This document shows positions 1 to 25,898 of a DNA stretch of 64,000 nt, piece by piece. The stretch's first letter is position 1. Every line of letters begins with the position of its first letter. The stretch lies in the IMG/VR virus record IMGVR_UViG_3300038463_000730, positions 186,001-250,000 of that record. The stretch is one strand, 5' to 3'. The translations under genes and the position numbers were made by a program. Under the pieces are notes generated by a model. The model was not told the DNA's origin, made no database searches, and worked only from the letters and a program-made list of their open reading frames with translations.

Positions 1-1510
1 CATTCTTTGCTGCAATAGCTGGCGCTTTTGGAAGTATTTCCTTCGTAAACCAATCAGCGAAACCAACTAGTGGACTAGTAGTATTCGATTGTGCTCCAGC
101 TTCACCGGTCGGACCCGGCCCGACTTTTTCTTTAATTTCACCTAGATACTTAAGAGCCGTATCCTGGTTCTTGCTAAGAACGTTCATTAGATTCTGGGTA
201 GCTTTCTCTACATCGCCCCAAGCGCCCCATCCACGAAAAACGTTCCCATACTGTTGCGAAATATGTTCCCCAACAATCATATAAATCGAGTTAGCTAGTT
301 TCCAACCTTCACGACACTTATCAGCTGCATCAACTAGCTGCTGAGCAGTAGAATTGGGTGAAAGATTACATGCCGCCGCGATCCCTGGCAGTTGAGCCTT
401 CAATTGCTCAACATAAAACCACTGACTACGATCTTCTTTGTTTGGATTGTTGCCTAACTCAGGAGCCTGACCTCTTGTGTCCTTCTGGAATTCCTCTTTT
501 AGATCTTCCGCTTCAGCTACAACGGCATTACCGGCCGCTTGGATCTTCTCTTGCGAATACCACATGTTCATTAGTAATTGGGTTGACCCTCCACCGAGAA
601 TGCCACCGATCGCGGCCCCCAATGCCCATGTCCCAAGACCAATGGCAGCAATCGTTGATCCAATTCCTCCCCCTCCGGCCGCAGCTCCACCTCCGGCAGC
701 GGCAGCACCGGCCCCAGCACCGGCAGCAGCCGGAGTAGTAGCGGCAGCCACACCACTATTCGCAATGAACCAGTCCGCTACTTGCGGAGCACCCCTTTGC
801 GCGAGCATTTTTAGTACTTGCTCTTCGGCTTCTTTCTGAGCAATGCCTTTGGCCGTGCGACTAGCAATCATTCTCTCGATTTCTTGCATGATCGCACCAG
901 GATTCTTATCCGGCACGGTCTTCGTGAGTTGGTAAATGGCCTTTACCAGCTGACCCATGATTTTGTCAGCTGCGGGGCCGAAAAAAGGGATAGCAGTTTT
1001 CTGCATTTCCTCCTTCTCTGCCAAGATCGTCTTCAATGCAGCCAATACCATTGTCTTCGACGCTAGTTTGCCGGTCGGTTCTTTCTCTACGACGTCTTTG
1101 ATCATTTTGTGTTGATCAAGTTTGTCTTCAACGACGCCAAGCTTGTCATGAGCCTCAGCCATTTCGACCGAACCAGCAGGGTGAGCGAATTCAAGCAGAG
1201 CTTCTCCGGTCTCCCCGTCCGTACCGTACATACGTACATAGTTCTGAGCCCTGACGTTCATGCGGAACTTCTCTTCCACACGCTCTGCCTCGGCAACGAG
1301 CCCCTTTACACGTAAGCCGAAACACAAACGAAGGATATCCTGGTTTAGGTTATCCGATGGAGCCAAACTAACATGACGTGGTGCCCTGGATAGGTTCCGC
1401 GCGGCTCGTTCTAGTCCGGATTCCTCTTTGATTAAATTCTTTTCTTTGGCGAGTTTGGTAAATTGCTGCATTACCTCACTCTGGCTTTCTGAAATGTGCT
1501 TATAAGTCAT
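1..1510 (-). CDS. Probable virion/internal-head protein with Gly/Ala-rich hydrophobic (glycine-zipper-like) segment; runs off the left edge (>=503 aa); absent from the ORF track
   Basis: Manual translation from ATG at 1510 (MTYKHISESQSEVMQQFTKLAKE...EMQKTAIPFFG...GIGSTIAAIGLGTWALGAAIGGILGGG...) is open to base 1 and carries KxA motifs like its neighbours. Confidence 0.75.
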   Translation of the reverse strand, partial: MTYKHISESQSEVMQQFTKLAKEKNLIKEESGLERAARNLSRAPRHVSLAPSDNLNQDILRLCFGLRVKGLVAEAERVEEKFRMNVRAQNYVRMYGTDGETGEALLEFAHPAGSVEMAEAHDKLGVVEDKLDQHKMIKDVVEKEPTGKLASKTMVLAALKTILAEKEEMQKTAIPFFGPAADKIMGQLVKAIYQLTKTVPDKNPGAIMQEIERMIASRTAKGIAQKEAEEQVLKMLAQRGAPQVADWFIANSGVAAATTPAAAGAGAGAAAAGGGAAAGGGGIGSTIAAIGLGTWALGAAIGGILGGGSTQLLMNMWYSQEKIQAAGNAVVAEAEDLKEEFQKDTRGQAPELGNNPNKEDRSQWFYVEQLKAQLPGIAAACNLSPNSTAQQLVDAADKCREGWKLANSIYMIVGEHISQQYGNVFRGWGAWGDVEKATQNLMNVLSKNQDTALKYLGEIKEKVGPGPTGEAGAQSNTTSPLVGFADWFTKEILPKAPAIAAKN

Positions 1511-1593: not shown

Positions 1594-2463
1594 TTACTTG
1601 GCATTTTCACGCCGTATGCGAAGAATCACCTTCTCAGTTACTCCAAAATCTTTACCTACCTTACCGGCACCTCTTGGATCTGTCATGATTTGTTTAATCT
1701 GTTCATCGGTGAATACATGTTTGTTCGACGGTGCCTGTCCGATCGTGCGATGTGGAGGTAATGTTTCGAGCGTTCCGTTGCGCTTTAGACGCTGTCCATG
1801 CTTCATGCAATATAGTTCACCTTGGTATCTTAGATAATCCCGACCTCCACCAACCACATCACAATCAGGCGCATGGCACTTTCGCTTGCCTTCTGCAATT
1901 TCTTTCTCATGACGTTGTTTGGTTGTCTCTGCGATTGACTGAATACGTTTTCCCACAGTTTCTTCTGATTGAATACGACCGGTAAATACTTCTGAGAACT
2001 TTTGGCGCATTTCATCGGTATAAACTGTTGGATTTTTAATCTTTCCTTGACTTATATTATTGCAAGCTTCTTCGGAACGTATTCTGCCTTGACTCGGATG
2101 ACCGAGTTCTTCTATTTGGCGCAATGTTGCTTCACGTAATTTTTGTTTTGTAGACTCAGAATGAGCCGAAGAGCGACCCCCAGCTTTTAGGTTATAACCA
2201 AACTCATGGTTGCGTGTATCGTACTGTGTTATTAGCACCGCTTCTGTTTCATCGGCATCCTCACGAGTTTGACAAGTAGCAATTATTTCAAAAGTAAAAC
2301 TATCAACCCCATATTTATTCATGGCACGATGAATATACTGTCCGGTTTTTTCTGGATGTTTAGCAAAATAACAATGTTGCCTCCAACGATATTGATCTTT
2401 GTTAGACTGTCCGATGTAAACTTTGCTATTTATTGTATTTGTGATTTTATATAGATAATGCAT
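1594..2463 (-). mobile_element. Free-standing GIY-YIG homing endonuclease with NUMOD3-like repeats, a zinc module and C-terminal HTH
   Basis: HYLYKITNTINSKVYIGQS, GYNL..GG and HSESTKQKL motifs; start placed at ATG 2463 behind GGAGG. Confidence 0.88.
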
Positions 2464-2526
2464 AGTTGCCTCCACTAAACTAGTGGACAGCGTATTCTAT
2501 ATATCGACCTAATCCGAATTGTATAA

Positions 2527-3216
2527 TTAGAGCCAGAGATACTGCAAAGTTCCGTTAACCGGGCTCGGTGGCGCAATACAAAGCGCAACGGCTGGATGAT
2601 GCGGAGTAACTTGACGTGTCGTTAGTAAACCAAGTTCACTAACAAACAAGTTCGCATTCAATGGATAGACTTGGTTCGTCTCGTAAACGTCCGTTTCACC
2701 GATAAAGCGCTGAAACCATACCGCGATACGGCCAGCTCCGATTGTCGAGTCATCTCCAATGATATTTGGGATCTGGTAACGATAGTTAACAACCGCTCGA
2801 ATCGCATTCGGTTGTCCCGAGCCGATCGCATCGAAATTGAGCGGCGTTCCGGCTGGAAATGTCACCAGTCCGTTCCGAGCTGTCAAAACCAAGCTGATAC
2901 TGCTCGTAAAACTTGATTGGATAACGTTCGGGTTCTTGAGCGGCACGAGTACATCGATTGGGGTAACAAGCTGTCCGTTCGGACCCGGAACGCCCGTTGC
3001 CGGAACAATCACGAACTCATTCCATGATGGAGCGGTAAACGCTCGTGTACGGATCTCGTCGATTACGCCGATCGGCGCTCGACCATCACTAACTCCACAA
3101 ACAACCGTGTTTCCCGAGACGTTTAGCTGAGCAATCATGCCCGGTTCGAACTCGCTTGATGGATCTACTATAAAGCTGAATGGTAGAGCGTTTCCTGTTT
3201 GAATAATTCTAAGCAT
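2527..3216 (-). CDS. Beta-rich structural protein, possibly capsid decoration/cement-like
   Basis: Beta-strand/Gly-Pro composition (FEPGMIAQL..PIGVID..LFVSELGLLT); lies downstream of the protease/scaffold gene; function inferred from position. Confidence 0.45.
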   Translation of the reverse strand: MLRIIQTGNALPFSFIVDPSSEFEPGMIAQLNVSGNTVVCGVSDGRAPIGVIDEIRTRAFTAPSWNEFVIVPATGVPGPNGQLVTPIDVLVPLKNPNVIQSSFTSSISLVLTARNGLVTFPAGTPLNFDAIGSGQPNAIRAVVNYRYQIPNIIGDDSTIGAGRIAVWFQRFIGETDVYETNQVYPLNANLFVSELGLLTTRQVTPHHPAVALCIAPPSPVNGTLQYLWL

Positions 3217-3976: not shown

Positions 3977-4642
3977 TTACTTCTTCTGAGCCTTCTCTTT
4001 TTCGAGCTTGGCTTTCTCTTTTTCTTTGCGAGCCTTATCATCGGCCTTGGCTTTATCAGCCTCTTCCTGCTTAAGTTTCTTGGCTTTCTCTTTGGCCTTC
4101 TGATCTTTGGCGTCCTGCTTATCCTTAAGCTTCTTAGCTTCCTCTTTGGTAAGCTTCTTTGCCTTGGCCTCTACTAGGATGTTATGTGCGAGCGTTAAGC
4201 TAAGTGCTGCTGTCTTATCAAGACCAGCCTCATCCAACACTTCAGACACTTTGCTGAGACTGTTAAGTGCTACTGCGATTGCCGTATTGAAGCCACCAAT
4301 CAGATCTTCTGCGCTGGCTTGATCATCGGCTTTGCATGAATCATCACATTCATGATCCTTTTCCATATCCTTTTTCTTACAACCCTTGGCTGCATGAACA
4401 TCATAAGGATCTCCGAAGCCTTTGGCGTCGTGCTTGTCCTCTTTGTCCTTTTTTGCGTCGTTGTCGTCCTTTTCCTTCTTTTTAAAAGGATTGGCGCGAG
4501 CGTCGTTGTCATCAACTTCATTGGCATCTTCTGCCTGACGCAACATGGCTGTCTTTGAGAACATTGATTCGAAATCTTTGCTCTTCATTAGTGCGTCCAT
4601 ATCGGCCGCAATCTGATACTCAAAACTGGTCGTCTTTTTCAT
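3977..4642 (-). CDS. Putative internal-head protein with Lys/Asp-rich repeats and a highly charged C-terminal helix
   Basis: FSKTA and LDKTA motifs; repeated DDNDA/DKHDA/DVHAA; SEVLDEAGLDKTA module. Confidence 0.6.
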   Translation of the reverse strand: MKKTTSFEYQIAADMDALMKSKDFESMFSKTAMLRQAEDANEVDDNDARANPFKKKEKDDNDAKKDKEDKHDAKGFGDPYDVHAAKGCKKKDMEKDHECDDSCKADDQASAEDLIGGFNTAIAVALNSLSKVSEVLDEAGLDKTAALSLTLAHNILVEAKAKKLTKEEAKKLKDKQDAKDQKAKEKAKKLKQEEADKAKADDKARKEKEKAKLEKEKAQKK

Positions 4643-4694: not shown

Positions 4695-7600
4695 TTAGTA
4701 CTTACGACCAGCGAAGGCCTTTGTTAGACTCGAATATAGATCGTCTGGCTCTCCTGATGGGAGCTGAGCCGATATCGGGTCACCTGATCCGATCATTCCG
4801 ATCATTGGAACACGTGATGCTTCCTTCTTGATTGCACGTGAAGGAGCCATCGCAACAATACGCTTCAAACTATTGAATGACTCGTCGTTGTAGCTGAGGA
4901 TTTCCTCGACCTGGGCCGCGAGAACGGATGGTTCCGTTCCGCACATTCCACGGTCTGCCATCTGGTAGGCCATGTCATATGCGCGTGCAACCTTTACCTT
5001 GTAGTCCGAGATCTCTTTCTCAGCAGCAGCCTTAGCATGCTCCTTTACAAGACCCTTCGCGAACTCCGATCCACCGTCAACAGGCTTCCACATCTGCATG
5101 TAGTAAGCGACTGCCGCTGGATCCGCTCCATGAGCAACGAGGTTTGGAACTTCCTCGTGGGTAATGGCTCCGGCTTTCACCATCTTCAAGATTTCCTCTG
5201 CATCCTTGCGGACCTTCGGTGGCGCCTCGGCGACATCCATCATCTTCGAGTGGATCTCTTCGATCTTCTCGATCTTGCCAAGGTCTCCCTCTGGCTTGAC
5301 GTCGAGCTGAGTCGTGTCGTCCGTGTACTTGTGGAACTCGGCCAACATTGGATTCCATTTGATCGACTCAGTCGCAAGCTTCGCACGGTATGCCGTACGT
5401 CCCTCGCGTGTCGTCAAGTCAAACGTCGCTGTATTCTTGAGTTCGAATTTCGTATCTGCTGGAGCCTGTGGCAAACTACCAAGCTGGTCCTTTGTCACTG
5501 CCACAGTGTTACCATTGTTACTATCGCTGGCCGCTGCCATTGCATGCTCCTTGTGTTCGCCTTCTTCTAGATTGACCAACTCCTTTAGCTCAGCAAGAAT
5601 TTGCTGCTCGGCTGGGTTTCCTTCGTCGTCTCCCCGTGCTTCGAGAGACGCAACCGCCTCAAGTGACTCGGTTCCACGTGCATAACGGACAAATCCGTCA
5701 AGACATTCTGTTGCATCGGCAAGAACATGGTTCGCATCAGAGATCGTGTCAGTTGACAACGTATCGATGTAAGAACGATTCTCTTCCGTGACAGCCTTGT
5801 TATCGTACAAGTCCTTCACTAGGTGAAGCTCGTCGATCTGGTTCTGAACCAAATCAGCTGTCTTGCGCATGCTGGACAATAGCGTCTTGTGAATGTCGAA
5901 ACGCATTCTCGACAATGTCGCTGTCGCCGCTGGCATACCCTCGCCCGGCGCCATCGGCGCTTCGCCTTCCATCGTCGGAATCGTATTACTAAGTTCTTCT
6001 TTTACATCGGAAAGATTAGTAATGGCTTCATCAAGCTTCTCGACCATCTGCTCTGGTCCGGCTTTGCCATCTCCGCCCTTGTCCGCTGTCGCAAGATCGC
6101 CCATCGGTGCGCCGCCCATTTCGCCCGCTGGCGAAGGAGCCGGTCCTGCCGCACCCATCGGTGCCGCATCCATTCCGCCACCCGCTGGTGCAACTGGAGG
6201 CTCGGCCTTCTTGAACATAGCAATGGCGCTTTCGAAACCATCGGCCTTGACCTTCTTCAACATCGATGCTCCGAACTCTTTCGTTGCAATCGACTCGCCG
6301 AGGACATCTGCACGTCCACTTGACAACTCATTAACAGTTGCCGCGAAAACTAGTTTGTCATCCGCAAAAATCTGCCACTGGCTCGCTCCGAGATCGACTT
6401 CACCAGTTGATGGCTTAGCAGCCTTGATGAATTTCGCTCGTAACGTTGCACGCTGCAAAAGCTCCTTGCGCTTTAGCTCGTCCTTTGGATCCGCAGACGA
6501 TGGCGACGGGTGTAGACCGGTCGTGCTGCCAACTCCTGGGAACGGAGGCTGGCCTTCCATCTGCTTGTCACCCTTCATACGAGTTTTCTCGTTGAGAGGA
6601 TCAACATCATACTTCTCTTTGCCTGGTGTGGGCTCGTTTACGCCACCCGCACCCTGGAAGTATGCACGACGCTTCTCAAGGGTTTCCTTGACGCGGGCAA
6701 TCGCTTCCTTACGGCGCGTACTACGCTGATCTAGCTCGGCGCGCAGAAGCCTCTTCTTACGAGCCTCCTCGCTTTCACCGGCTGACTGCGGTCCCGGGTG
6801 CATACCCTCGACCGGACCAGTGTCCATCTGGCCTTCCATTTGTTTATCACCGTGAGTACGGAGCTTCTCGTTTAGAGGATCCTTCTCGTACTTTGGTGTT
6901 CCTGGACTTGGCTCGTTCACACCACCGGCACCCTGAAAATAGCTCTTTTTTTCCATTGTTGTTTCCCTTGACCCATCACCTAGATTTGACAATTTACGAA
7001 AGTCCTCTTCAATCTTTGCGAGTTTATGCTCGATATCACGTTTTAGTGATAGGAACTGGTTCTTTAATGCATCATTATTCTCAGAATTCGTAGATGCAAC
7101 GCGCAAAGCGTAAGGATTATTCAGCGCCGCTGGATCTTGATCCAACGGAACCTGGGTTGCATCGACTATCGATGAACCACTATTACTAAAGTTTGAGGAA
7201 TCCTGAACCTCGCCCTCGTCTCGACCATCAAACTCTCGGATGAGAGTGTCCAGACCTTCTTTAATATGACTTACAATCTGTTGTTTAATTTCGTTGACCT
7301 TTTCACTTGATGTGCCGGTCAATGACTTAAGTTCGCTCAACCCTGCATCGGCCTGACTGTTTAGAGTCCTGGCAGATGCTAGAATATGACGAATCTTAGC
7401 TTGTGGATCGGCACCGTTAACTACGATCGATAGCTCTAGTGGCTTTAGATCCAAGTTAATCTCGCCGTAACATGACTTGCTGGTCATATGCGAACAAAAG
7501 TCCGCTTCCGTACGCGCAACACGTCCACAATCACTACAGATTGCACGACCCACTGCCGTACCCATCGATACACATGTAGCGTACCCTGTAGAAACTTTTC

Positions 7601-8117
7601 TTGCTAATTCAGGGAACGAAACTTTATCAAGCGCACATAACGCAATAACGCGCTTGGCCTTGCGGTCGTAATATGTATCGATGATTACACCACGAATGTG
7701 ATCTACTGATCCAGACTTGTGATCGATACAGAGTGGGCATCCGACCCACTTCTTGTAAGCTTTAAGTAACTCTTCCTCTGGGAAGATGTCACCGTTCGAA
7801 TTCTTGTAAGGCATGACCGATGGATCATTAGATACCCATCGAAGCGATTCGCCATTCGTCGCCCAACCAGCTGTTACCGGAAGACCACTGGCTGTCTTCT
7901 TTGGTTTACCTTCCGGGTCAACCGTTGAAGCCTCGGCTGCATGCATCATGACAGCTGAGAAATAAAGAAAGTCATCTCCCTTTGGAGCGATTCGCTTCAA
8001 ACCAGTCGCTAACGACTTAATGCGACTCTCAAGCTCTGGATCTGCAAGCACCTTCTCGGGTGACTCAATATCTGATTCCAAAACCTGACCTATTTCAGCA
8101 AACTTGTAAAGGGTCAT
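4695..8117 (-). CDS. Prohead (capsid maturation) protease fused to a long scaffold-like/polyprotein region
   Basis: N-terminal NSNGDIFPEEEL..IDH..IRGVIID..VSMG..CSDCG..C.H..E.N....ELSIVVNGADPQAKI fits a herpes/HK97-fold phage head protease; followed by coiled coils and a duplicated ~70-aa repeat. Confidence 0.78.
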   Translation of the reverse strand: MTLYKFAEIGQVLESDIESPEKVLADPELESRIKSLATGLKRIAPKGDDFLYFSAVMMHAAEASTVDPEGKPKKTASGLPVTAGWATNGESLRWVSNDPSVMPYKNSNGDIFPEEELLKAYKKWVGCPLCIDHKSGSVDHIRGVIIDTYYDRKAKRVIALCALDKVSFPELARKVSTGYATCVSMGTAVGRAICSDCGRVARTEADFCSHMTSKSCYGEINLDLKPLELSIVVNGADPQAKIRHILASARTLNSQADAGLSELKSLTGTSSEKVNEIKQQIVSHIKEGLDTLIREFDGRDEGEVQDSSNFSNSGSSIVDATQVPLDQDPAALNNPYALRVASTNSENNDALKNQFLSLKRDIEHKLAKIEEDFRKLSNLGDGSRETTMEKKSYFQGAGGVNEPSPGTPKYEKDPLNEKLRTHGDKQMEGQMDTGPVEGMHPGPQSAGESEEARKKRLLRAELDQRSTRRKEAIARVKETLEKRRAYFQGAGGVNEPTPGKEKYDVDPLNEKTRMKGDKQMEGQPPFPGVGSTTGLHPSPSSADPKDELKRKELLQRATLRAKFIKAAKPSTGEVDLGASQWQIFADDKLVFAATVNELSSGRADVLGESIATKEFGASMLKKVKADGFESAIAMFKKAEPPVAPAGGGMDAAPMGAAGPAPSPAGEMGGAPMGDLATADKGGDGKAGPEQMVEKLDEAITNLSDVKEELSNTIPTMEGEAPMAPGEGMPAATATLSRMRFDIHKTLLSSMRKTADLVQNQIDELHLVKDLYDNKAVTEENRSYIDTLSTDTISDANHVLADATECLDGFVRYARGTESLEAVASLEARGDDEGNPAEQQILAELKELVNLEEGEHKEHAMAAASDSNNGNTVAVTKDQLGSLPQAPADTKFELKNTATFDLTTREGRTAYRAKLATESIKWNPMLAEFHKYTDDTTQLDVKPEGDLGKIEKIEEIHSKMMDVAEAPPKVRKDAEEILKMVKAGAITHEEVPNLVAHGADPAAVAYYMQMWKPVDGGSEFAKGLVKEHAKAAAEKEISDYKVKVARAYDMAYQMADRGMCGTEPSVLAAQVEEILSYNDESFNSLKRIVAMAPSRAIKKEASRVPMIGMIGSGDPISAQLPSGEPDDLYSSLTKAFAGRKY
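6447..6941 (-). repeat. Two copies of a ~70-aa repeat (YFQGAGGVNEP.PG..KY..DPLNEK.R..GDKQMEGQ...G.HP.P.SA...RK..L.RA) at ~6738-6941 and ~6447-6662
   Basis: Directly visible in the translation. Confidence 0.92.
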
Positions 8118-8428: not shown

Positions 8429-9049
8429 TCACTTCGTCTTACTAAGTTCCTGCTGCTGGGCATCGAAGAGTTTACTGTCGTATGGAACCTTCTCTTCAAT
8501 ATGGTTGTCACCGCCCGCTTCATCGACCCAGCTCTTAGCTAATATATCTGTCTCCAAATAAGATTGAATACGCTCGTCCACTATTTCTTTCAATTGGTCG
8601 ATCTCTTTGCTCATCGTGTCCAATGTCTTGACTGCGTTATCTTTGAAATCGTCCGCTTGCAAGTTGTTGAAATAGTCCTTGAATATACGAAACTGTTTCG
8701 ATACATCATCAATGCTCATGTTGAAAGACTTCATCAACTTTTCAACTTGTGTGTCGGACATGAATGTCATCATGATCTGCGCACAATGAAAAGCTGCTTC
8801 CTTCATGTTATCTAGGTTTTCCTCGGCACGATCGCGATAATCGCGGAACGTCCGGCGAAACTTCCAGATCTGTTCCGGAGTGATGTCCTGGTTCTCTTTG
8901 AATGGAATGAACATCTTCTGAAGATGGTCAGCGAATACATCAATAACCTTGATCAGTTTGCTGAACGCCGTAATAGCTTTCTCAGCTTGCATTTTTTCGA
9001 CATCCGAGATGTCGTAGTTCATTTGTGTTCGATATGATCTTTTTTGCAT
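8429..9049 (-). CDS. Helical-bundle hypothetical protein
   Basis: Start moved to ATG 9049 (MQKRSY), which removes the overlap with the upstream gene. Confidence 0.6.
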   Translation of the reverse strand: MQKRSYRTQMNYDISDVEKMQAEKAITAFSKLIKVIDVFADHLQKMFIPFKENQDITPEQIWKFRRTFRDYRDRAEENLDNMKEAAFHCAQIMMTFMSDTQVEKLMKSFNMSIDDVSKQFRIFKDYFNNLQADDFKDNAVKTLDTMSKEIDQLKEIVDERIQSYLETDILAKSWVDEAGGDNHIEEKVPYDSKLFDAQQQELSKTK

Positions 9050-9050
9050 G

Positions 9051-10262
9051 TTAGACAAAGCCGCCTCCAATTGGACCACTGGTTCCCCAACCAAATCCGT
9101 TCGTGTTAGTTCCACCATCGGATGTTCCGACTTGCGGAACCTCATTAGGCTCTATACCACCTGGTACCTTTTTTGGTATGATATCAGCTTTCGGGTCAGT
9201 ATCGGTTCCTTGTCCATTTTGGTTTCTAGTACTAGCCGAACTATTTACGAAATCCCAGTGACTACCGTATGACGCATCACCCATGCCGTACGGGTTGACT
9301 TCGTTAGCTTCGTACAGTCTGACGCCGAAAGATGGGTCGTTAAGCTCGTAGCTTGTATCGAACTTGTAGTCCGCCACAGCATCGGGCCACAGCATCTCCA
9401 TCGCCGAATTCGAATCTTGACCAGCTATCGCATGGATCATCTTCTCGTAAAGCGTACGTACTTTCTTTGGTAATCCGGAGCAAAAATCGAACTTGTCTGC
9501 TTCAGCAATCGCATCCTCCGGGCTCATACCTTTCGACACCCGGTACAACGCAACCACGAGCCCGGTACGATCCTTACCATGCAAACAATGTACAAAAGTC
9601 GGACCTGATTCTTCGAATAGCTCTTTGAAATTCATCTTCATCAAGCCACGCAACGACTGTTGCTTCTTAGCCATGATCGGAATTATCACGTGGACCATTC
9701 CGAGCTTCTTCACGAGTGGACCGATCTTCTTAGCCGTGTCCAAATCCAAACTAACAATCTTCTTGATACCTAGTTTCTTCAGGTATATAAGGTCCTCAGG
9801 AGTAGCGGGAGCACCTCCTCGATAAAGCTGGTCGGTAACCTTAGAAAACCTAGGAATCGCTGGGTCTTCCAACACATCCACCGAACTCTCATCCCCCTCA
9901 GGTATGCCTTCGAACTTAAATTTCTTCCCCAACAAAGCGAGTGTTGTGCGAAGCGCTTTCTCTTCACTTTTTCCTTTCAATGCTGGAAACACAGAGTCGA
10001 ACACAGACTTGAACAAGACCCGGAACAACGCAAACAATTCATCATTGCCTGACGCACGCAATTTACGCATGACCGCCGAGTACGATAGGTCACCGACGTC
10101 AGATAGGTTGATAGAGTCGGTCGCGATCTTCCGAATCTCAACTTCTTTTAGACGTTCGACTGCCTTAGAACGACTCGAAAAGGTTCCGAAGTTCTTTCCG
10201 GTGTATGATTGCACCTGGTATCTCCCGTTCGGAAGTTTCCGGATGATGGCAGTCTTGATCAT
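9051..10262 (-). CDS. Protein-tyrosine/dual-specificity phosphatase (Siw14/IphP-like) with N-terminal extra domains
   Basis: FSKVTDQLYRGGAP, LKKLGIKKIVSL and P-loop FVHCLHGKDRTG (HCX5R). Confidence 0.88.
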   Translation of the reverse strand: MIKTAIIRKLPNGRYQVQSYTGKNFGTFSSRSKAVERLKEVEIRKIATDSINLSDVGDLSYSAVMRKLRASGNDELFALFRVLFKSVFDSVFPALKGKSEEKALRTTLALLGKKFKFEGIPEGDESSVDVLEDPAIPRFSKVTDQLYRGGAPATPEDLIYLKKLGIKKIVSLDLDTAKKIGPLVKKLGMVHVIIPIMAKKQQSLRGLMKMNFKELFEESGPTFVHCLHGKDRTGLVVALYRVSKGMSPEDAIAEADKFDFCSGLPKKVRTLYEKMIHAIAGQDSNSAMEMLWPDAVADYKFDTSYELNDPSFGVRLYEANEVNPYGMGDASYGSHWDFVNSSASTRNQNGQGTDTDPKADIIPKKVPGGIEPNEVPQVGTSDGGTNTNGFGWGTSGPIGGGFV

Positions 10263-14254: not shown

Positions 14255-16105
14255 TTATTTCGGCGGAGGTGGAGGTGGAGCTGCGCCTGCGCCAGCTTCT
14301 CCACCCGGAGGGCCACCTGGAGGCGCCCCGGGAGGACCGGGCGGTCCGCCACCCGGAGGAGCACCAAGATCCGGCATACCGCCGCCACCACCGGCACCTG
14401 GCAAGTCACCACCGCCTCCACCACCGTCGTCATCACCACCTGGCGTTTCACCAGGCAACGGAGCTTCGGCGGTCTCTGGGATCTCATCCTCATCGCCAAG
14501 AGTGCGAAGCTCGTTGAGCGGCATCTTTTGCAAGCTCACTTGCTCCTTTTTGCGAATCGCGTCCTGCACATCTTCCTTGCGCATCTTACGAACCTCTTCC
14601 TCGAACTCTAGTCCGAGCGAACGATAGAGTGTCTGGTTTGATACGCGCTTGTTCTTTACGTCATCTGTCAAATGAACAAGGTTCTGAATATAGTCACCGG
14701 CATCGAAGAGCGACATGTGATTCCAGTCAATCTCCGGAATGATCAAATGCTTCTGCTTCTCGTGGAACACATAGAATTCGTTCAACTTCGAGATCGGTGC
14801 GAAAATCTTGCGACGCAACCACGTTGAGAGCATGTTACGGAACTGCATGTAACGTTGACGAAGTACGTCCAACGCTACACCGCCGTTGGCATAGGTCGTA
14901 TCCTGACCACCATCCATCAATACAGATGGTACCATCAATCCGATCCAGATTTCTTTAATCAGTTGCGTGATGTCACCAGAGATATCATAGATACCCTGAC
15001 CCGAACCGATACGCTCAACCGTTACGGCATCGTTTGTGAAGATCTTGAAGTCTTTGTCGTACTGTGCTGCTTCGAAAATCTCACGATACGAATCGATTTG
15101 CTGCGGACTTGGTTTGAACTCAGGTGATCCGACCTTCACCAACGTGAGTGGGTTGATCATATTGTCTGCCTGAGCGAACTTTGACTCACGGAGCTTGTCA
15201 AAGAGCATCAACTGACGAAAAAACGCGACCGGTAGTCCGGTTCCACGTGACTCGTACGGCGAGATACGTCGTGCAAGATGGCTTACATAAAAATTGTCAA
15301 GCGGAATGTTCTGGCCACGCTTGACGTACTCAATAATGTGCGGCCCGAGCTGTTTCTTTTGTTCAAGATCAGATGGTTTCTGCGAAAACACGATACGACG
15401 GAGGTTGGCATCAGGCCTGAGCATGATAATCGGTTCACTTGATATAACCGAAGGACTGACAACAACATAATCCGGGTTCTGAATACGGAGACGACTCCAA
15501 CGAAGATTGCGCTCATCCAATTCAGCATAGATAAATGACTCCCCTAGCAGCCAGAACTCCTGAGCAATCTGAACGCAGACGTTCATCAAGTCGATTTCAT
15601 CAATCATCTCATTGAAGAACTTTTCAACACGTTTATCAGGACAACGAATCGTCATCTTACTGATCGGATACGTGCTATGTAGATTGATTGCGTTGTTCAC
15701 GAACGGGTTCAACGCATAGAAGCTGCGACACCACGCATTGATCGTCGCTCGATCACGAGGAAGGTTTAGGTTCGAGTTTAGCCAAAGAGGAGAATAGACC
15801 TCCGGCGCCTGACGTACCGTGTCTCCCATACCACCTTGCCATTGAGCCGAGGTGTTTGTTCCTAGTGTACTGGAAAGGTTGGCGTACTTCGACATCGGCT
15901 GTTTACCAACCGAATACGTTGCGTAACCACCGGCACTAGGCTCTTCATCTCGTGCAACGGGACCGGAGCCATCTCGATAGATGCCTTTGTTTACCTCTTC
16001 TTCAAGAGCAGCACGTCGATATTGAGAAACATTGCGTGCCACATGACTCGATATGATCGGTGGCAGATTTCTATTAGGTATTCTTGGGTTTCTAGGGTTA
16101 ACCAT
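14255..16105 (-). CDS. Portal protein
   Basis: NPFVNNAINLHSTYP, EFWLLGESF, HLARRISPYESRGT, GL.VPSVLMDG..TYAN; near terminase and protease; Gly/Pro tail. Confidence 0.8.
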   Translation of the reverse strand: MVNPRNPRIPNRNLPPIISSHVARNVSQYRRAALEEEVNKGIYRDGSGPVARDEEPSAGGYATYSVGKQPMSKYANLSSTLGTNTSAQWQGGMGDTVRQAPEVYSPLWLNSNLNLPRDRATINAWCRSFYALNPFVNNAINLHSTYPISKMTIRCPDKRVEKFFNEMIDEIDLMNVCVQIAQEFWLLGESFIYAELDERNLRWSRLRIQNPDYVVVSPSVISSEPIIMLRPDANLRRIVFSQKPSDLEQKKQLGPHIIEYVKRGQNIPLDNFYVSHLARRISPYESRGTGLPVAFFRQLMLFDKLRESKFAQADNMINPLTLVKVGSPEFKPSPQQIDSYREIFEAAQYDKDFKIFTNDAVTVERIGSGQGIYDISGDITQLIKEIWIGLMVPSVLMDGGQDTTYANGGVALDVLRQRYMQFRNMLSTWLRRKIFAPISKLNEFYVFHEKQKHLIIPEIDWNHMSLFDAGDYIQNLVHLTDDVKNKRVSNQTLYRSLGLEFEEEVRKMRKEDVQDAIRKKEQVSLQKMPLNELRTLGDEDEIPETAEAPLPGETPGGDDDGGGGGGDLPGAGGGGGMPDLGAPPGGGPPGPPGAPPGGPPGGEAGAGAAPPPPPPK

Positions 16106-17784: not shown

Positions 17785-19638
17785 TTATCTCATTCTTGGA
17801 ACTGTGCCAAGCGTAATTGGCAAATTACCGTGTTTTCTCTTGTCAAACGGGTTATTGAAGAGTAGCGGATTTTTTACAGTGAACCCTTGTGTTAGATAGA
17901 ACTTGTAAGCCAGGTACCCGTTCAACATAGCCATGAAACCGTCATTAGGAGTCGCTCCCTTCACATAGTGCGGCGACATATCTCCAGAACGATTAACGCT
18001 TGGTTTAATCTCCATGCTAGTACAGTGCTGTACGAGCCAATTCACCTTCTCATAGTCGCCGTAAGGAAACCGTACATGGCCTTTCTTCATTTGCTCGTAC
18101 ATTTCACCAATAGAAAAGTCGCGCTCGAACTGAATCATCTTTGGAAAGATGTCCTTCTGGAACTTTACCTTGTCCATAATTCTTGGGAGCGCGTTCGATG
18201 CCAAAAACTTGTCTCCATACTCGTTCTGCATTATCTCGCAGAAGTCGTTTGAGTACCCGATATCGCATACTGCCACGTTCACACTGTAAATCCGCATCAA
18301 ATGGTCTATGAACGCCTTCTTACTAGCGAAGTCGTTACGCTTGAACTTCGCTGCAAACTCGATTTGCAGGCGTTTTGGACCGGACAGCGACATGATCACG
18401 ACGCAGCTATAGCTCTGACCAACTCCTTTCAGCTTCGAGTTCTCTGCGAGCTGCTCCATGTCCGATTTGGCCCCGATGTCGATACCCATGAACACAGCTT
18501 GCTCGGCACCCGGTGGAATATGTGCCCGGAAACGACGCCCAACATCTCCGCATTTCTCACGGACATCATCCGGAGTCATGATACCGGACTCACCCGAGAA
18601 GAACTCTCCCAATACCTCGTTCTGGTAGGCTCGTTCTGTATTGATCGGTGAGTTTCCTGGCTTTTCTGATACAATCTTCTCTTTGTTGAATTCCGGAATG
18701 AACAACTGGCTCATGTGGAAACCGATGAACGGACAATCGTCCGGGTTCTTCAACGCTACCCACTTGCCAGTTTCGGCGGCATCACGTTTATCTTGTTCGT
18801 GATTGCAATGTGGGCACTTGACGGTAAAACCGTGAAGCCACGTCTTCTCCCAGTCATCCGTGCCGGGGGTATAGAGCGGGAAGAACCGATTGCAACCAGA
18901 ACAATGTAAATTAAAATATTGCTGTGACGATTGGTTCCACATCTCGAAGAACTCGCTACCGCGCTGCTTCGGTGTACCGAAGAATATCTGAACACCGTCA
19001 CCTAGTTTTCCATAGTTAGCTTTCGCCAACATCTTGGTCGCGTTACCTATGGCGAGACCAGGGATATCTTGTACTTCATCGAAGAAAATAACATCGGCTG
19101 ATCGACCACGAAGTCTGTCAGCCGTTTCACCCGTTGATTCGATCCAGATATGATTGCCGCCAACGAACTGTTTGAAATTCAACGAATCATTTCGTCCGCT
19201 CGTTTGATCCAGTAGGCCTTGCATATAGGACCGAGGCTTCTGCCCCTTCTTCGCCTGATCGAACGACACAGCGTTCGTGATCATCGGGTTGAGCTTGGTT
19301 TTAGAGTAAGCGTAAGCTAGATCCAACTGCGGGAATGCATGGATGATACGCATCGGAGGGTTACTGGAGTTACCAAATAACCCACACCCCATGAAGTACA
19401 TCTCCAAGGCTGATGCCATCGTCGTGGCACCAACCTGGCGCCCTTTTACGATGATAACTGGCTTCGAATCTTTCTCCAAAGCCTTGATCGCAATGTAGCG
19501 ATAGATATCGGAGAACGGCTTGTAACCGCCTCGCAAAGTAAACGGTTTACCGTCGAGTGTAAGATACTTTTCGACGTAATAAATTGGGTCTAAACTTAAA
19601 AGTGAAGACTTAAGTTGTGCAAATAATTCATCAGACAT
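17785..19638 (-). CDS. Terminase large subunit (lambda GpA-like)
   Basis: Walker A KGRQVGAT, LRGRSADVIFFDE Walker B, GTP coupling motif, CxxC..CxxC ribbon, nuclease GIDIG and NDGFMA. Confidence 0.92.
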   Translation of the reverse strand: MSDELFAQLKSSLLSLDPIYYVEKYLTLDGKPFTLRGGYKPFSDIYRYIAIKALEKDSKPVIIVKGRQVGATTMASALEMYFMGCGLFGNSSNPPMRIIHAFPQLDLAYAYSKTKLNPMITNAVSFDQAKKGQKPRSYMQGLLDQTSGRNDSLNFKQFVGGNHIWIESTGETADRLRGRSADVIFFDEVQDIPGLAIGNATKMLAKANYGKLGDGVQIFFGTPKQRGSEFFEMWNQSSQQYFNLHCSGCNRFFPLYTPGTDDWEKTWLHGFTVKCPHCNHEQDKRDAAETGKWVALKNPDDCPFIGFHMSQLFIPEFNKEKIVSEKPGNSPINTERAYQNEVLGEFFSGESGIMTPDDVREKCGDVGRRFRAHIPPGAEQAVFMGIDIGAKSDMEQLAENSKLKGVGQSYSCVVIMSLSGPKRLQIEFAAKFKRNDFASKKAFIDHLMRIYSVNVAVCDIGYSNDFCEIMQNEYGDKFLASNALPRIMDKVKFQKDIFPKMIQFERDFSIGEMYEQMKKGHVRFPYGDYEKVNWLVQHCTSMEIKPSVNRSGDMSPHYVKGATPNDGFMAMLNGYLAYKFYLTQGFTVKNPLLFNNPFDKRKHGNLPITLGTVPRMR

Positions 19639-24460: not shown

Positions 24461-25201
24461 CTATTTCAGCTTGTCTCCAACTGTTTGGGTTAAAAACTTA
24501 GCCTCAGCTAATCTGACTTCAGTCGGTACCGGAACGTTGGCTTGAAAATCTAACGATCCGATACGTTTAGTGTACTGCTCAACGAAGTACAACGACGCCT
24601 CGTAATCGATCATTGACAGAACATCCTTTACCGTTTCAATGATCAGGCCAATTTGTTTATCAGCAACTTGCAACGTATGATTATGCTGGATGACTTGATC
24701 AGGCGCACCGTTATTTATCTTGTTTGCTTTATCCAATGAATCCATCAGCAGCGTAAGATACTTGAAAAGCGTATGGTCATCTTGGAATTCAGCCGGATCA
24801 TCTTGGATCTTGTCGAAAACCTGTTCAACACGCATTTCGATCATTGCTAAACAATTGTTAACTTTGTCTCTCGTAGACAACTCCGAACCTACCAGCTCCG
24901 CCAGTCGTTCTTTGTACTTTTTATTTCCACGAACCGTCGCACTGAGCGCTTTATCAATGTCGTTATCGGGACTTTTGACCTTTAAAATGTCTTCACGCAT
25001 CTGGACATAGAAATCCAGATGCGTGTTTGCAAATGTCTTAAGGAACTCTAGCGAAATCACAAATCTGGATTCGCTTGGAGTAGTGTATTTACTTTCTAAC
25101 CATACGTGAACGTCCTCCGGGGTCGAGCCCTGGATTAGTTTCGCAATAATCATATCCTTATCGGGGTGGTCCAAGAATTTTTTAATTGCAGTTTTGTTCA
25201 T
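24461..25201 (-). CDS. HTH/helical protein, candidate terminase small subunit
   Basis: N-terminal HTH-like HPDKDMIIAKLIQGSTPEDVHVWLE followed by helices; in the packaging region; assignment tentative. Confidence 0.35.
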   Translation of the reverse strand: MNKTAIKKFLDHPDKDMIIAKLIQGSTPEDVHVWLESKYTTPSESRFVISLEFLKTFANTHLDFYVQMREDILKVKSPDNDIDKALSATVRGNKKYKERLAELVGSELSTRDKVNNCLAMIEMRVEQVFDKIQDDPAEFQDDHTLFKYLTLLMDSLDKANKINNGAPDQVIQHNHTLQVADKQIGLIIETVKDVLSMIDYEASLYFVEQYTKRIGSLDFQANVPVPTEVRLAEAKFLTQTVGDKLK

Positions 25202-25898
25202 AGTCAGTTTCCCATATACTTATCAAGTTATATCCAGCCTTCTTTATCAATTCCTCGCGCTGAAGCGTCTGTTGATACAATTCGCCGAATGTTTTCTTAC
25301 TCCTTTGATTGAAATCGTTTTTATTAAATCGAATTGGGTTGCCATGCCAATAATCACCGTAAAACTCATACACGGTATTTGTTTCTGGCTTGTACCCATC
25401 CACTTTGTAATTATGATAGAGGACTTTTACTAGCGTCTGCCGATGTGCAACATCTACACCGAGTCCGTCTAACCATTCCGTCTCTTGCTTAGAAATACGC
25501 TTTAAACAACGAGGGCAACCATTACCTGCAAGGTGGTTGCCTGGAGTCTGACTAAACGCAACATTACAGCGTTTACATAAAATCGAGATCTTGGTGTCTT
25601 TGTTTTTGTAGACTACACCTGCGTAATCGTATAGCTGTCCATGCACCTGGATAGCATCTACCACAAATTCGCTAATGCGTTTGCGTTTTGATTCGGCTTT
25701 GGCAACGTTACCACATGTCGGACAGCCCTGACCTCGCATATGATTATTTGCTAACTGTGTGAACATGTGTTCACACACATTACATCGAACGGTTATCTTC
25801 GAACTTAGGTTTACGTAACCACATTCCGAATAGTCATATGTGCAACAGTGAACCAACCTGCATCTATCTAAAAACTCTGATTTGGTCAGTTTCCTCAT
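25182..25898 (-). mobile_element. Putative homing endonuclease: DUF723-like zinc repeats plus a Vsr/PD-(D/E)XK-like nuclease
   Basis: Two YDY...I.C..C...F.Q...NH..G.GCP.C repeats; VDGY..VYEFYGDYWHGNP..GYNLISIWE. Confidence 0.8.

What the first reader, a model, noticed from the sequence alone, without database searches (positions are those of the whole stretch)
4695..8117. The protease gene looks like a self-processing polyprotein releasing two copies of a ~70-aa module
Seen: after the protease domain, two near-identical repeats each begin right after a tag-like site (MEKKS|YFQG, EKRRA|YFQG) and end at LLRA|/LQRA|. Further sites (LRVA, FKKA, KNTA, KLA, KKEA) divide the rest into coiled-coil and Ala/Gly/Pro/Met segments. 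Inference: a protease-scaffold-internal-protein polyprotein that gives a fixed 2:1 yield of a small product.
Basis: partly seen in the sequence, partly recalled or inferred. Interest (0 to 1): 0.75.

Follow-up and report, generated by a model that had tools for sequence, protein, structure and literature searches.

The report
Nested protease-scaffold gene, huge phage
This gene of a 435-kb phage encodes a capsid-maturation protease fused to a long scaffold-like tail that carries an always-duplicated, unfolded, highly conserved 75-residue module, and a conserved ribosome-binding site inside the gene probably also makes the tail on its own; this is a new variant of the lambda and herpesvirus arrangement, and the proposed cutting into pieces is plausible but unproven.

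Summary
ORF 4695..8117 (-) encodes 1140 aa with two tandem modules starting at Tyr393 and Tyr486. They are 51% identical, not near-identical.

The N-terminus has the T4 gp21 / herpes assemblin protease fold, with invariant His133 and Ser184. The gene lies between portal and major capsid genes. More than 800 full-length homologues exist in huge-phage contigs. The module occurs only in this family, in two copies even in the most divergent full-length members inspected.

Invariant Met388, five residues before module 1, follows a conserved Shine-Dalgarno motif:
- Predicted pairing is as strong as at real gene starts (-5.9 vs -1.8 kcal/mol for other internal ATGs).
- The upstream Glu-Glu is coded GAGGAA in 54 of 55 homologues, against 12% elsewhere.
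- The window's clade changed the amino acids but kept AAGGGA.
- One homologue, split by an HNH endonuclease gene, restarts at this Met.

A 753-aa protease-less product is therefore likely, as in lambda C/Nu3 and herpes UL26/UL26.5.

Self-processing is untested. Every variable linker does contain one conserved [KR]-x-[AGS] island, at 341, 392, 485, 638 and 1100. These include both module starts and are the best candidate cut sites. No T4-type x-x-Glu motif is conserved. The "2:1 yield" is trivially true of any product.

The parts
4695..8117 (-). Whole ORF, 1140 aa: protease-scaffold fusion
   Evidence: More than 841 full-length homologues at 40-75% identity on contigs up to 500 kb.
7368..8000 (-). 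Prohead serine protease domain (about residues 40-250). His133 and Ser184 are invariant. A Cys194/Cys197/Cys208/His210 insertion is present.
   Evidence: PHROG head maturation protease, E 1e-15. Phage G gp19 36% identity, E 5e-25. Domain model matches T4 gp21 5jbl at Z 9.8 and VZV protease at Z 8.4. Foldseek prob 0.97. Invariant columns.
6957..7367 (-). Linker, residues 251-387: helices 238-297, variable disordered 298-349 with the conserved island R339-x-A341|S342, then helix 349-380
6964..6969 (-). Internal Shine-Dalgarno-like AAGGGA, 7 nt upstream of the Met388 ATG
   Evidence: sequence. Duplex dG -5.3 here and mean -5.9 in 66 homologue loci, against -1.8 for 2241 other internal ATGs and -6.0 for the genes' own starts. 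Met388 is the only conserved Met column with 100% strong SD. GAGGAA in 54/55 vs 12% elsewhere, P 9e-49.
6954..6956 (-). ATG of Met388 (invariant in the 113 aligned homologues): proposed internal in-frame start of a 753-aa protease-less product
   Evidence: The HNH-split homologue L005 begins its second gene at the equivalent Met.
6738..6950 (-). Module 1 (residues 390-460): K-x-[AGS]|Y-F-Q-G ... L-L-R-A. Predicted disordered, ending in a basic helix.
6672..6737 (-). Basic helix between the modules (residues 461-482)
6447..6671 (-). Module 2 (residues 483-557): the better-conserved copy (P525 F526 P527 G530 invariant)
6204..6446 (-). Small alpha/beta domain (residues 558-638, pLDDT about 88), ending at the island K636-x-A638|Q639
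6057..6203 (-). Ala/Gly/Pro/Met-rich disordered linker (residues 639-687)
5538..6056 (-). Long helices, coiled-coil-like (residues 688-860)
5427..5537 (-). Variable acidic disordered linker (residues 861-897), ending at conserved A897
4818..5426 (-). Conserved helical C-terminal domain (residues 898-1100), ending at the island K1098-x-A1100|G/S
4695..4817 (-). C-terminal tail (residues 1101-1140 plus stop): conserved R-x-P-Q-V-G-x-I-G-S-G, a disordered stretch and a terminal amphipathic helix. Candidate capsid-protein-binding tail (inference).

Best explanation
The gene is a nested protease/scaffold gene of the head-assembly module of a huge (about 435 kb) tailed phage.

Two translation products are proposed. 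Translation from the first ATG gives an 1140-aa protein. It consists of a serine prohead protease of the T4 gp21 / herpes assemblin fold (His133, Ser184), a coiled-coil linker and a roughly 750-aa scaffold-like body. A conserved Shine-Dalgarno motif and ATG at Met388 very probably also give an in-frame 753-aa product without the protease. This mirrors lambda C/Nu3, Mu I/Z, herpes UL26/UL26.5 and HFTV1 gp17/gp17.5. It would let the phage make much scaffold and little protease, with the protease co-assembling through the shared body.

The nested product opens with two copies of a 75-residue module (K-x-[AGS]-Y-F-Q-G ... N-E-P-T-P-G ... K-Y-P ... D-K-Q-M-x-G-Q ... H-P-S-P ... R-K-x-M-L-x-R-A). 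The module is predicted to be unfolded on its own, yet it is conserved about as well as the protease core. It is found only in this family, in two copies. It most likely folds onto a partner in the procapsid.

After assembly the protease is inferred to cut the scaffold at conserved [KR]-x-[AGS] islands in the linkers, after residues 341, 392, 485, 638 and 1100, and perhaps 897, 460 and 557. That would free the protease, detach the C-terminal tail, and separate the modules from the folded domains so the pieces can leave or stay in the head.

Shown: the repeat, its fixed copy number, the protease fold, the genomic context, the internal RBS signature and the linker islands. Inferred: actual internal initiation, actual cleavage and its sites, and the binding partner.
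For: - Repeat.
- Family and copy number: 113 of 113 aligned homologues carry both copies. The module profile found 172 clusters among 1.84 billion representatives, nearly all long proteins with two matches and no evident stand-alone module gene; short matches look like fragments. The most divergent members still have two copies.
- Protease.
- Context: terminase at 17785-19638 and portal at 14255-16105; major capsid protein about 9.5 kb downstream.
- Architecture.
- Internal start. SD strength equals that of true starts. Met388 is the only conserved Met column with it. GAGGAA occurs in 54/55 against a 12% background. The window clade has Arg-Glu instead of Glu-Glu but keeps AAGGGA.
- Natural split: in L005 the upstream ORF ends just after the module-1 junction, an HNH-like ORF follows, and the second gene starts at the conserved Met behind GGAGGA.
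- Linker islands: within linkers 298-349, 853-900 and 1094-1126 the only positions conserved at 85% or more are P335/R339/A341, D865/N867/A897 and K1098/A1100/P1104/V1106/G1107.
- A neighbouring 550-aa head-module protein has a similar island, K-L-[AS]|[SNT].
- Known nested protease-scaffold genes and P2 gpO autoprocessing are described in bioRxiv 10.64898/2026.09.13.751334.
Against: - No protein-level data exist for this uncultured phage family. Internal initiation and cleavage are both inferred from sequence.
- [KR]-x-[AGS] is short. About 30 such tripeptides are expected by chance in 1140 aa, so only conservation and location single these out. The islands could be binding motifs instead.
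- AlphaFold2 did not dock any candidate site into the protease in cis; these regions have pLDDT below 50.
- The structure prediction of capsid protein plus modules gave no answer.
- The homologue loci are related, so the codon statistics overstate independence, although synonymous sites should be saturated at 40-50% amino-acid identity.
- The R-A ends of the modules lie in predicted helices.
Confidence: 0.6

Rival explanations
1. A single polyprotein is cut by its own protease after Ala at MEKKS|Y, LLRA|, EKRRA|Y and LQRA|. This releases two discrete peptides of about 70 aa as the functional product in a fixed 2:1 ratio. Further cuts at LRVA, FKKA, KNTA, KLA and KKEA follow.
For: Small residues at 392, 485, 460 and 557 are 99-100% conserved, with K or R at P3 or P2. 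The module is far better conserved than its surroundings. Copy number is always two. Scaffolds of protease-bearing phages are generally cut into pieces (background knowledge; SPN3US example in PMC10052503).
Against: The conserved internal RBS and ATG show that release of the module N-terminus from the protease is not needed for most copies. LLRA and LQRA sit in predicted helices, and LQRA sits at the start of a folded domain. They use a different register from the linker islands. KLA (913-915) is inside a well-folded helical domain. No stand-alone module gene exists that would point to an independent peptide function.
Confidence: 0.25
2. The modules and linker islands are uncleaved short linear binding motifs of a scaffold. 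They recruit portal, capsid protein or cargo proteins, as the conserved aromatic motif of the herpes scaffold recruits the portal. The scaffold leaves intact or is degraded without defined sites.
For: The modules are predicted to be disordered yet strongly conserved, which is typical of fold-on-binding motifs. The capsid protein of the family is 83-89% identical, so a direct partner would be under strong constraint. The herpes portal-binding motif is recalled from memory, not tested.
Against: The prediction of capsid protein plus modules gave no answer, which is not evidence either way. A protease domain is fused and invariant, so some processing is expected. Isolated two-residue islands ([KR] and a small residue two positions on) in otherwise free-varying linkers are unusual for binding motifs and typical of cleavage sites.
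Confidence: 0.3
3. The part after the protease is not a scaffold but internal head or ejection protein cargo. It is targeted to the prohead by fusion to the protease and retained after cleavage, as in phiKZ-like inner-body proteins or T4 internal proteins.
For: Huge phages often pack many internal proteins. Neighbouring genes encode low-complexity Ala/Gly/Gln-rich proteins. No separate conserved scaffold gene was recognised. The 221-aa charged protein downstream is poorly conserved, with 9 hits in 79 loci.
Against: Long coiled coils, the C-terminal tail helix and the nested-start arrangement are the hallmarks of scaffolds. The capsid protein has no delta domain: the PHROG match covers residues 6-332 of 338. 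A separate scaffold is therefore required, and this is the only candidate conserved across the family.
Confidence: 0.1

Closest known systems
Nested protease/scaffold genes: lambda C/Nu3, Mu I/Z, herpes simplex UL26/UL26.5, Haloferax virus HFTV1 gp17/gp17.5
   Same: N-terminal protease, a scaffold-like C-terminal body, and an in-frame internal start that yields the scaffold alone. Position between portal and capsid genes. Sequence-level signature of an internal RBS. The concept is documented in bioRxiv 10.64898/2026.09.13.751334.
   Different: No detectable sequence similarity outside the protease fold. The body is much longer (753 aa). It starts with an invariantly duplicated, disordered, conserved module plus a small alpha/beta domain that have no Pfam family. 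The lambda C protease belongs to a different fold class (ClpP/S49; from memory).
T4 gp21 prohead protease (PDB 5jbl) and herpesvirus assemblins
   Same: Best structural matches of the N-terminal domain: Z 9.8 and 8.4, Foldseek prob 0.97. Conserved His and Ser. The herpes enzymes cut after Ala at a release site next to the protease and a maturation site near the scaffold C-terminus. This parallels the islands at 341|342 (R-[YFL]-A|S) and 1100|1101. The herpes site consensus is recalled from memory.
   Different: No sequence-level match to any solved structure and no Pfam protease family hit. A Cys/His-rich insertion is present. The T4/phiKZ-type x-x-Glu cleavage motif is not conserved in the linkers.
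Bacillus phage G gp19 and the long protease fusions of Bxz1-like mycobacteriophages (LinStu gp97, 1286 aa) and Gordonia phages
   Same: Closest named relatives of the protease domain: 36% and 28% identity, with shared His, Ser and Cys-x2-Cys...Cys-x-His. LinStu gp97 is also a >1200-aa fusion lying two genes upstream of the major head protein.
   Different: Phage G gp19 is a stand-alone 300-aa protease. The C-terminal part of LinStu gp97 shows no similarity and lacks the module.
P2 gpO protease-scaffold fusion
   Same: A single gene with an N-terminal protease and C-terminal scaffold, with autoproteolysis (as summarised).
   Different: gpO is made as one product without an internal start and is far shorter. 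No homology was tested here.

Membership tests
Prohead (capsid maturation) serine protease, gp21/assemblin fold | Characteristic fold | tested here: met
   Domain model (pLDDT 77.5) matches T4 gp21 5jbl at Z 9.8 and VZV protease at Z 8.4. Foldseek E 3e-3, prob 0.97, followed by herpes proteases.
Prohead (capsid maturation) serine protease, gp21/assemblin fold | Conserved catalytic His and Ser | tested here: met
   His133 and Ser184 are invariant in 113 homologues and in phage G gp19 and LinStu gp97. Their equivalence to the gp21 catalytic residues was not checked by superposition.
Prohead (capsid maturation) serine protease, gp21/assemblin fold | Gene lies in the head module between portal and major capsid protein | tested here: met
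   Portal at 14255-16105 and terminase at 17785-19638. Major capsid protein at L001:14137-15153.
Prohead (capsid maturation) serine protease, gp21/assemblin fold | Proteolytic activity on head proteins | not testable with these tools
   Needs expression and mass spectrometry.
Nested protease/scaffold gene (lambda C/Nu3 type) | In-frame internal start codon with its own ribosome-binding site | tested here: met
   Sequence-level only. SD dG -5.9 vs -1.8 for controls. The column is unique among conserved Mets. Codon choice GAGGAA in 54/55 vs 12%.
Nested protease/scaffold gene (lambda C/Nu3 type) | Two polypeptides actually made, with the shorter in excess | not testable with these tools
   No culture, proteome or ribosome profiling is available.
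Nested protease/scaffold gene (lambda C/Nu3 type) | C-terminal body with scaffold character (coiled coil, disorder, terminal capsid-binding element) | tested here: inconclusive
   Long helices, disordered linkers and a terminal helix are predicted. Binding to the capsid protein could not be assessed.
   N-terminal boundaries share K-x-[AGS]|Y with the other linker islands. C-terminal boundaries (L-x-R-A) differ and lie in predicted helices.
T4 / phiKZ-type maturation cleavage (hydrophobic or small residue, any residue, Glu) | Conserved x-x-Glu sites in linkers or propeptides | tested here: not met
   No conserved Glu in linkers 298-349, 853-900 or 1094-1126. The only conserved Glu residues in disordered parts are E385 (part of the SD codons) and V-N-E before an invariant Pro.

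The most novel reading that the evidence does not exclude
The two modules are cut out at the conserved K-x-[AGS]|Tyr and Arg-Ala sites. They then persist in the mature head as extended peptides bound to the inner face of the extremely conserved capsid protein. That would make them a built-in, stoichiometrically fixed internal 'glue' or size-determining element specific to these very large capsids, delivered by the scaffold itself.
Probability: 0.12. Interest if true: 0.7.

Novelty: new variant of a known kind. Interest (0 to 1): 0.5.

Why it matters
How capsids holding more than 400 kb of DNA are built is largely unknown, because nearly all such phages are uncultured.

This gene family has more than 800 members and no annotation. 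It appears to combine protease, scaffold and an unrecognised conserved duplicated element in one locus. It also shows a clear sequence signature of translational control through a nested start.

The work gives annotators a rule for these genomes: call the internal product at the Glu-Glu-x-Met site. It also gives experimenters a short list of testable cut sites and a defined 75-residue motif whose partner should reveal how scaffold and shell, or scaffold and portal, recognise each other in giant heads.

Tried and rejected
- Pfam found nothing significant in the protein. A profile search of PDB sequences found nothing. Foldseek with the full-length model gave only a weak gp21 hit, so the protease domain was modelled separately.
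It was redone without them.
- Several shorter 'homologues' that begin just before module 1 (P0217, P0241, P0221, P0245) looked like gene fissions. They are contig-end truncations, with the ORF open to the contig edge. Only L005 (HNH insertion), and possibly L009, are real splits. L010 is too short to judge.
- P0018 and P0079 looked as if they had a third module. P0018 has an unrelated 120-aa insertion and P0079 a split match.
- The structure prediction of capsid protein plus modules 386-560 scored 0.00, which is no answer.
- The ESM Atlas search of 386-640 gave only sub-threshold leads.
- The T4-like L-x-E reading of P-L-N-E-K inside the module was rejected because those residues are not conserved in many homologues.
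- Q|G cleavage, as in the TEV site, was rejected because the other islands do not share it.
- A second internal start was looked for. Met columns near 716 and 722 have weak, inconsistent SD signals.
Full report
**Observation.** The ORF at 4695..8117 (- strand) encodes 1140 aa. YFQG occurs at residues 393 and 486, preceded by MEKKS and EKRRA. The units end with LLRA (460) and LQRA (557). The two units align at 51% identity over 92 residues, E 3e-28. At DNA level 6549-6662 matches 6828-6941 at 74% over 114 nt. The repeat is therefore real but diverged, not near-identical. The window is part of a single 434,688-bp contig, with essentially all long ORFs on the - strand.

**What the protein is.** Residues about 40-250 match a PHROG head-maturation protease at E 1e-15. 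They also match Bacillus phage G gp19 (36% identity, E 5e-25), Gordonia phage Stormageddon 'capsid maturation protease' and Bxz1-like mycobacteriophage proteins. Pfam and PDB sequence searches are silent. A model of the domain alone (pLDDT 77.5) has T4 gp21 (5jbl) as best structural match, Z 9.8, followed by varicella-zoster protease at Z 8.4. Foldseek ranks gp21 first (prob 0.97) and then a run of herpes assemblins.

His133 (IDH) and Ser184 (VSMG) are invariant across 113 family members and in phage G gp19 and LinStu gp97. So is a Cys194-x2-Cys197...Cys208-x-His210 insertion.

The neighbourhood is a classical head module. It contains terminase large subunit 17785-19638, portal 14255-16105, this gene, several small or low-complexity proteins, and the major capsid protein about 9.5 kb downstream (L001:14137-15153, PHROG major head protein, E 2e-73). 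The capsid protein match covers residues 6-332 of 338. It therefore has no delta domain, and a separate scaffold is needed.

**Architecture.** The AlphaFold2 model built with 113 homologues gives this layout:
- protease, residues 50-230
- helices, 238-297
- variable disordered linker, 298-349
- helix, 349-380
- module 1, disordered, 381-449
- basic helix, 450-482
- module 2, disordered, 483-546
- helix 547-557 running into a confident small alpha/beta domain, 559-636
- Ala/Gly/Pro/Met-rich disorder, 638-685
- long helices, 688-860
- acidic disorder, 861-900
- helical domain, 904-1090
- disorder, 1096-1125
- terminal helix, 1127-1136

This is the make-up of a protease fused to a scaffold.

**Family and copy number.** More than 841 full-length homologues (40-75% identity, about 1100-1280 aa) exist on metagenomic and viral contigs of up to about 500 kb. 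None is named. All 113 aligned members carry both module copies.

A profile of 114 module copies was searched against 1.84 billion representative proteins. It found 172 clusters, nearly all long proteins with two matches; short matches look like fragments, and no stand-alone module gene was evident. The four most divergent full-length members inspected (two of which matched only once) still show a second, degenerate copy.

Module 2 is the more constrained copy. The module region is conserved about as strongly as the protease core, whereas the flanking linkers vary freely.

Met388, five residues before Tyr393, is invariant. In 66 non-redundant homologue loci from IMG/VR the ATG is preceded by ...CAA GAG GAA AAT ATG.
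- Predicted pairing to the anti-Shine-Dalgarno sequence averages -5.9 kcal/mol, with 79% at or below -6.
- The 2241 other in-frame ATGs in the same genes average -1.8, with 7% at or below -6.
- The genes' own start codons average -6.0.
- Among 19 conserved Met columns, only this one has a strong SD in every sequence (67 of 67; the others 0-41%).
- The Glu-Glu upstream is coded GAGGAA in 54 of 55 cases, against 12% of 675 other Glu-Glu dipeptides in these genes (binomial 9e-49).
- In the window's own clade the residues are Ser-Arg-Glu-Thr-Thr-Met, yet the DNA keeps AAGGGA (6969..6964) seven bases before the ATG at 6956..6954, dG -5.3. Selection therefore acts on the nucleotides.

A natural experiment agrees. 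In locus L005 the gene is interrupted by an HNH-endonuclease-like ORF. The upstream piece ends just past the junction (...KARREYWLKA stop). The downstream 805-aa gene starts at the equivalent Met behind GGAGGA and reads MNSARIKARARARRA-YWQGGGG.

I conclude that the locus very probably makes two products: the 1140-aa protease-scaffold and a 753-aa scaffold alone. This is the arrangement known from lambda C/Nu3 and herpes UL26/UL26.5, and recently shown by ribosome profiling for HFTV1 gp17/gp17.5 (bioRxiv 10.64898/2026.09.13.751334). Mu I/Z is a further example, recalled from memory.

**Cleavage.** No tool here can show proteolysis. What can be said is that each freely varying linker contains one small island of conservation with a common pattern: Lys/Arg at P3 and Ala/Gly/Ser at P1.

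| Site | Conservation in 113 homologues |
|---|---|
| R339-x-A341\|S | 97 and 107 |
| K390-x-[GAS]392\|Y393 | 113 and 113 |
| K483-x-A485\|Y486 | 98 K + 7 R, and 98 A + 14 G/S |
| K636-x-A638\|Q | 108 and 95 + 17 |
| K1098-x-A1100\|G/S | 110 and 106 |
| A897 | 105, without a fixed basic residue |

Within linkers 298-349, 853-900 and 1094-1126 these are almost the only conserved positions. A 550-aa protein of the same module has a similar island, K-x-P-T-G-K-L-[AS]|[SNT], at 143-151.

By contrast, the x-x-Glu motif of T4 and phiKZ-like proteases is not conserved anywhere in the linkers. That motif is background knowledge; PMC10052503 documents that SPN3US gp245 cleaves head proteins at a defined motif.

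The pattern, a release-type site just after the protease part and a site about 40 residues from the C-terminus, both after Ala, recalls herpes assemblin R and M sites. That comparison is from memory and is an analogy only.

They lie in predicted helices and use a different register. KLA at 913-915 is inside a folded helical domain.

My estimates are as follows:
- about 0.75 that the protein is processed at all
- about 0.45 that the [KR]-x-[AGS] islands are the sites
- about 0.25-0.35 that discrete 70-90-aa module peptides result

**Function of the module.** This remains unknown. It is disordered in isolation but strongly conserved, and it sits at the N-terminus of the nested product. The family's capsid protein is unusually conserved (83-89% identity) while the scaffold is 40-50% identical. 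A fold-on-binding contact with capsid protein, portal or cargo is therefore the most economical reading.

A structure prediction of capsid protein plus residues 386-560 scored 0.00 and gives no answer. The Atlas search gave nothing usable.

**Verdict.** The locus is best described as a nested protease/scaffold gene of a known kind. It carries a new, invariantly duplicated module and a plausible but untested set of Ala-type cleavage sites. The '2:1 yield' is a trivial consequence of two copies per chain.

Noticed in passing
homologues P0034, P0120, P0125, P0134, P0175, P0225 (no window coordinates): Many family members are 1360-1665 aa because an intein (Pfam Hom_end_hint / Intein_splicing hits on P0034 and P0120) or another large insertion of 150-390 aa sits after residue ~106. 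That position is in the invariant K-N-S|N-G-D motif of the protease domain.
   Followed up: partly
L005:1-3016: In one homologue the protease-scaffold gene is split by an HNH-endonuclease-like ORF (335-535). The split falls exactly at the junction before module 1, and the junction peptide is partly duplicated on both sides.
   Followed up: yes
window 7465-7539 (-), residues 194-216: The protease domain has a Cys-x2-Cys...Cys-x-His(-x5-Cys) insertion. It is conserved in this family, phage G gp19 and Bxz1-like gp97, and looks like a zinc knuckle. Nothing equivalent was noted for T4 gp21 (not checked by superposition).
   Followed up: no
window 1-1510 (-) continuing into L001:19858-20000: A 550-aa head-module protein has a conserved N-terminal ~150 aa ending in the island K-x-P-T-G-K-L-[AS]|[SNT], followed by Ala/Gly-rich low complexity. 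It may be a propeptide cut by the same protease.
   Followed up: partly
window 1594-2475 (-) and 25182-25898 (-): Homing endonuclease genes (GIY-YIG, Pfam E 9e-11; HNH, PHROG E 9e-28) are embedded in or near the head module.
   Followed up: no
window 9051-10262 (-): A 403-aa protein with a tyrosine/dual-specificity phosphatase domain (Pfam Y_phosphatase3, E 3e-9) lies between portal and protease genes. Its 3' end overlaps the start of ORF 8429-9145 by 95 nt. Homologues are present in most related loci.
   Followed up: no
L001:14137-15153 (-): The major capsid protein is 83-89% identical across the listed best homologues (1747 matches in all). The protease-scaffold of the same phages is only 40-50% identical, so constraint on the shell is unusually strong.
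   Followed up: partly
window 2527-3216 (-): A 229-aa protein with no family match is conserved at a median 58% identity in 73 related ORFs in those loci. It could be a decoration or minor capsid protein.
   Followed up: no
window 3977-4642 (-): A 221-aa Lys/Asp/Glu-rich protein lies directly downstream of the protease-scaffold gene. It is poorly conserved (9 hits in 79 loci), so it is unlikely to be the family's main scaffold.
   Followed up: partly
L003:5839-9699: Bxz1-like mycobacteriophage LinStu gp97 (1286 aa, annotated hypothetical) has the same protease domain at its N-terminus. It lies two genes before the major head protein. Its long tail is unrelated but also contains Gly/Pro/Ala/Met-rich stretches. 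This looks like an independent or very diverged protease-scaffold fusion that is still unannotated.
   Followed up: partly
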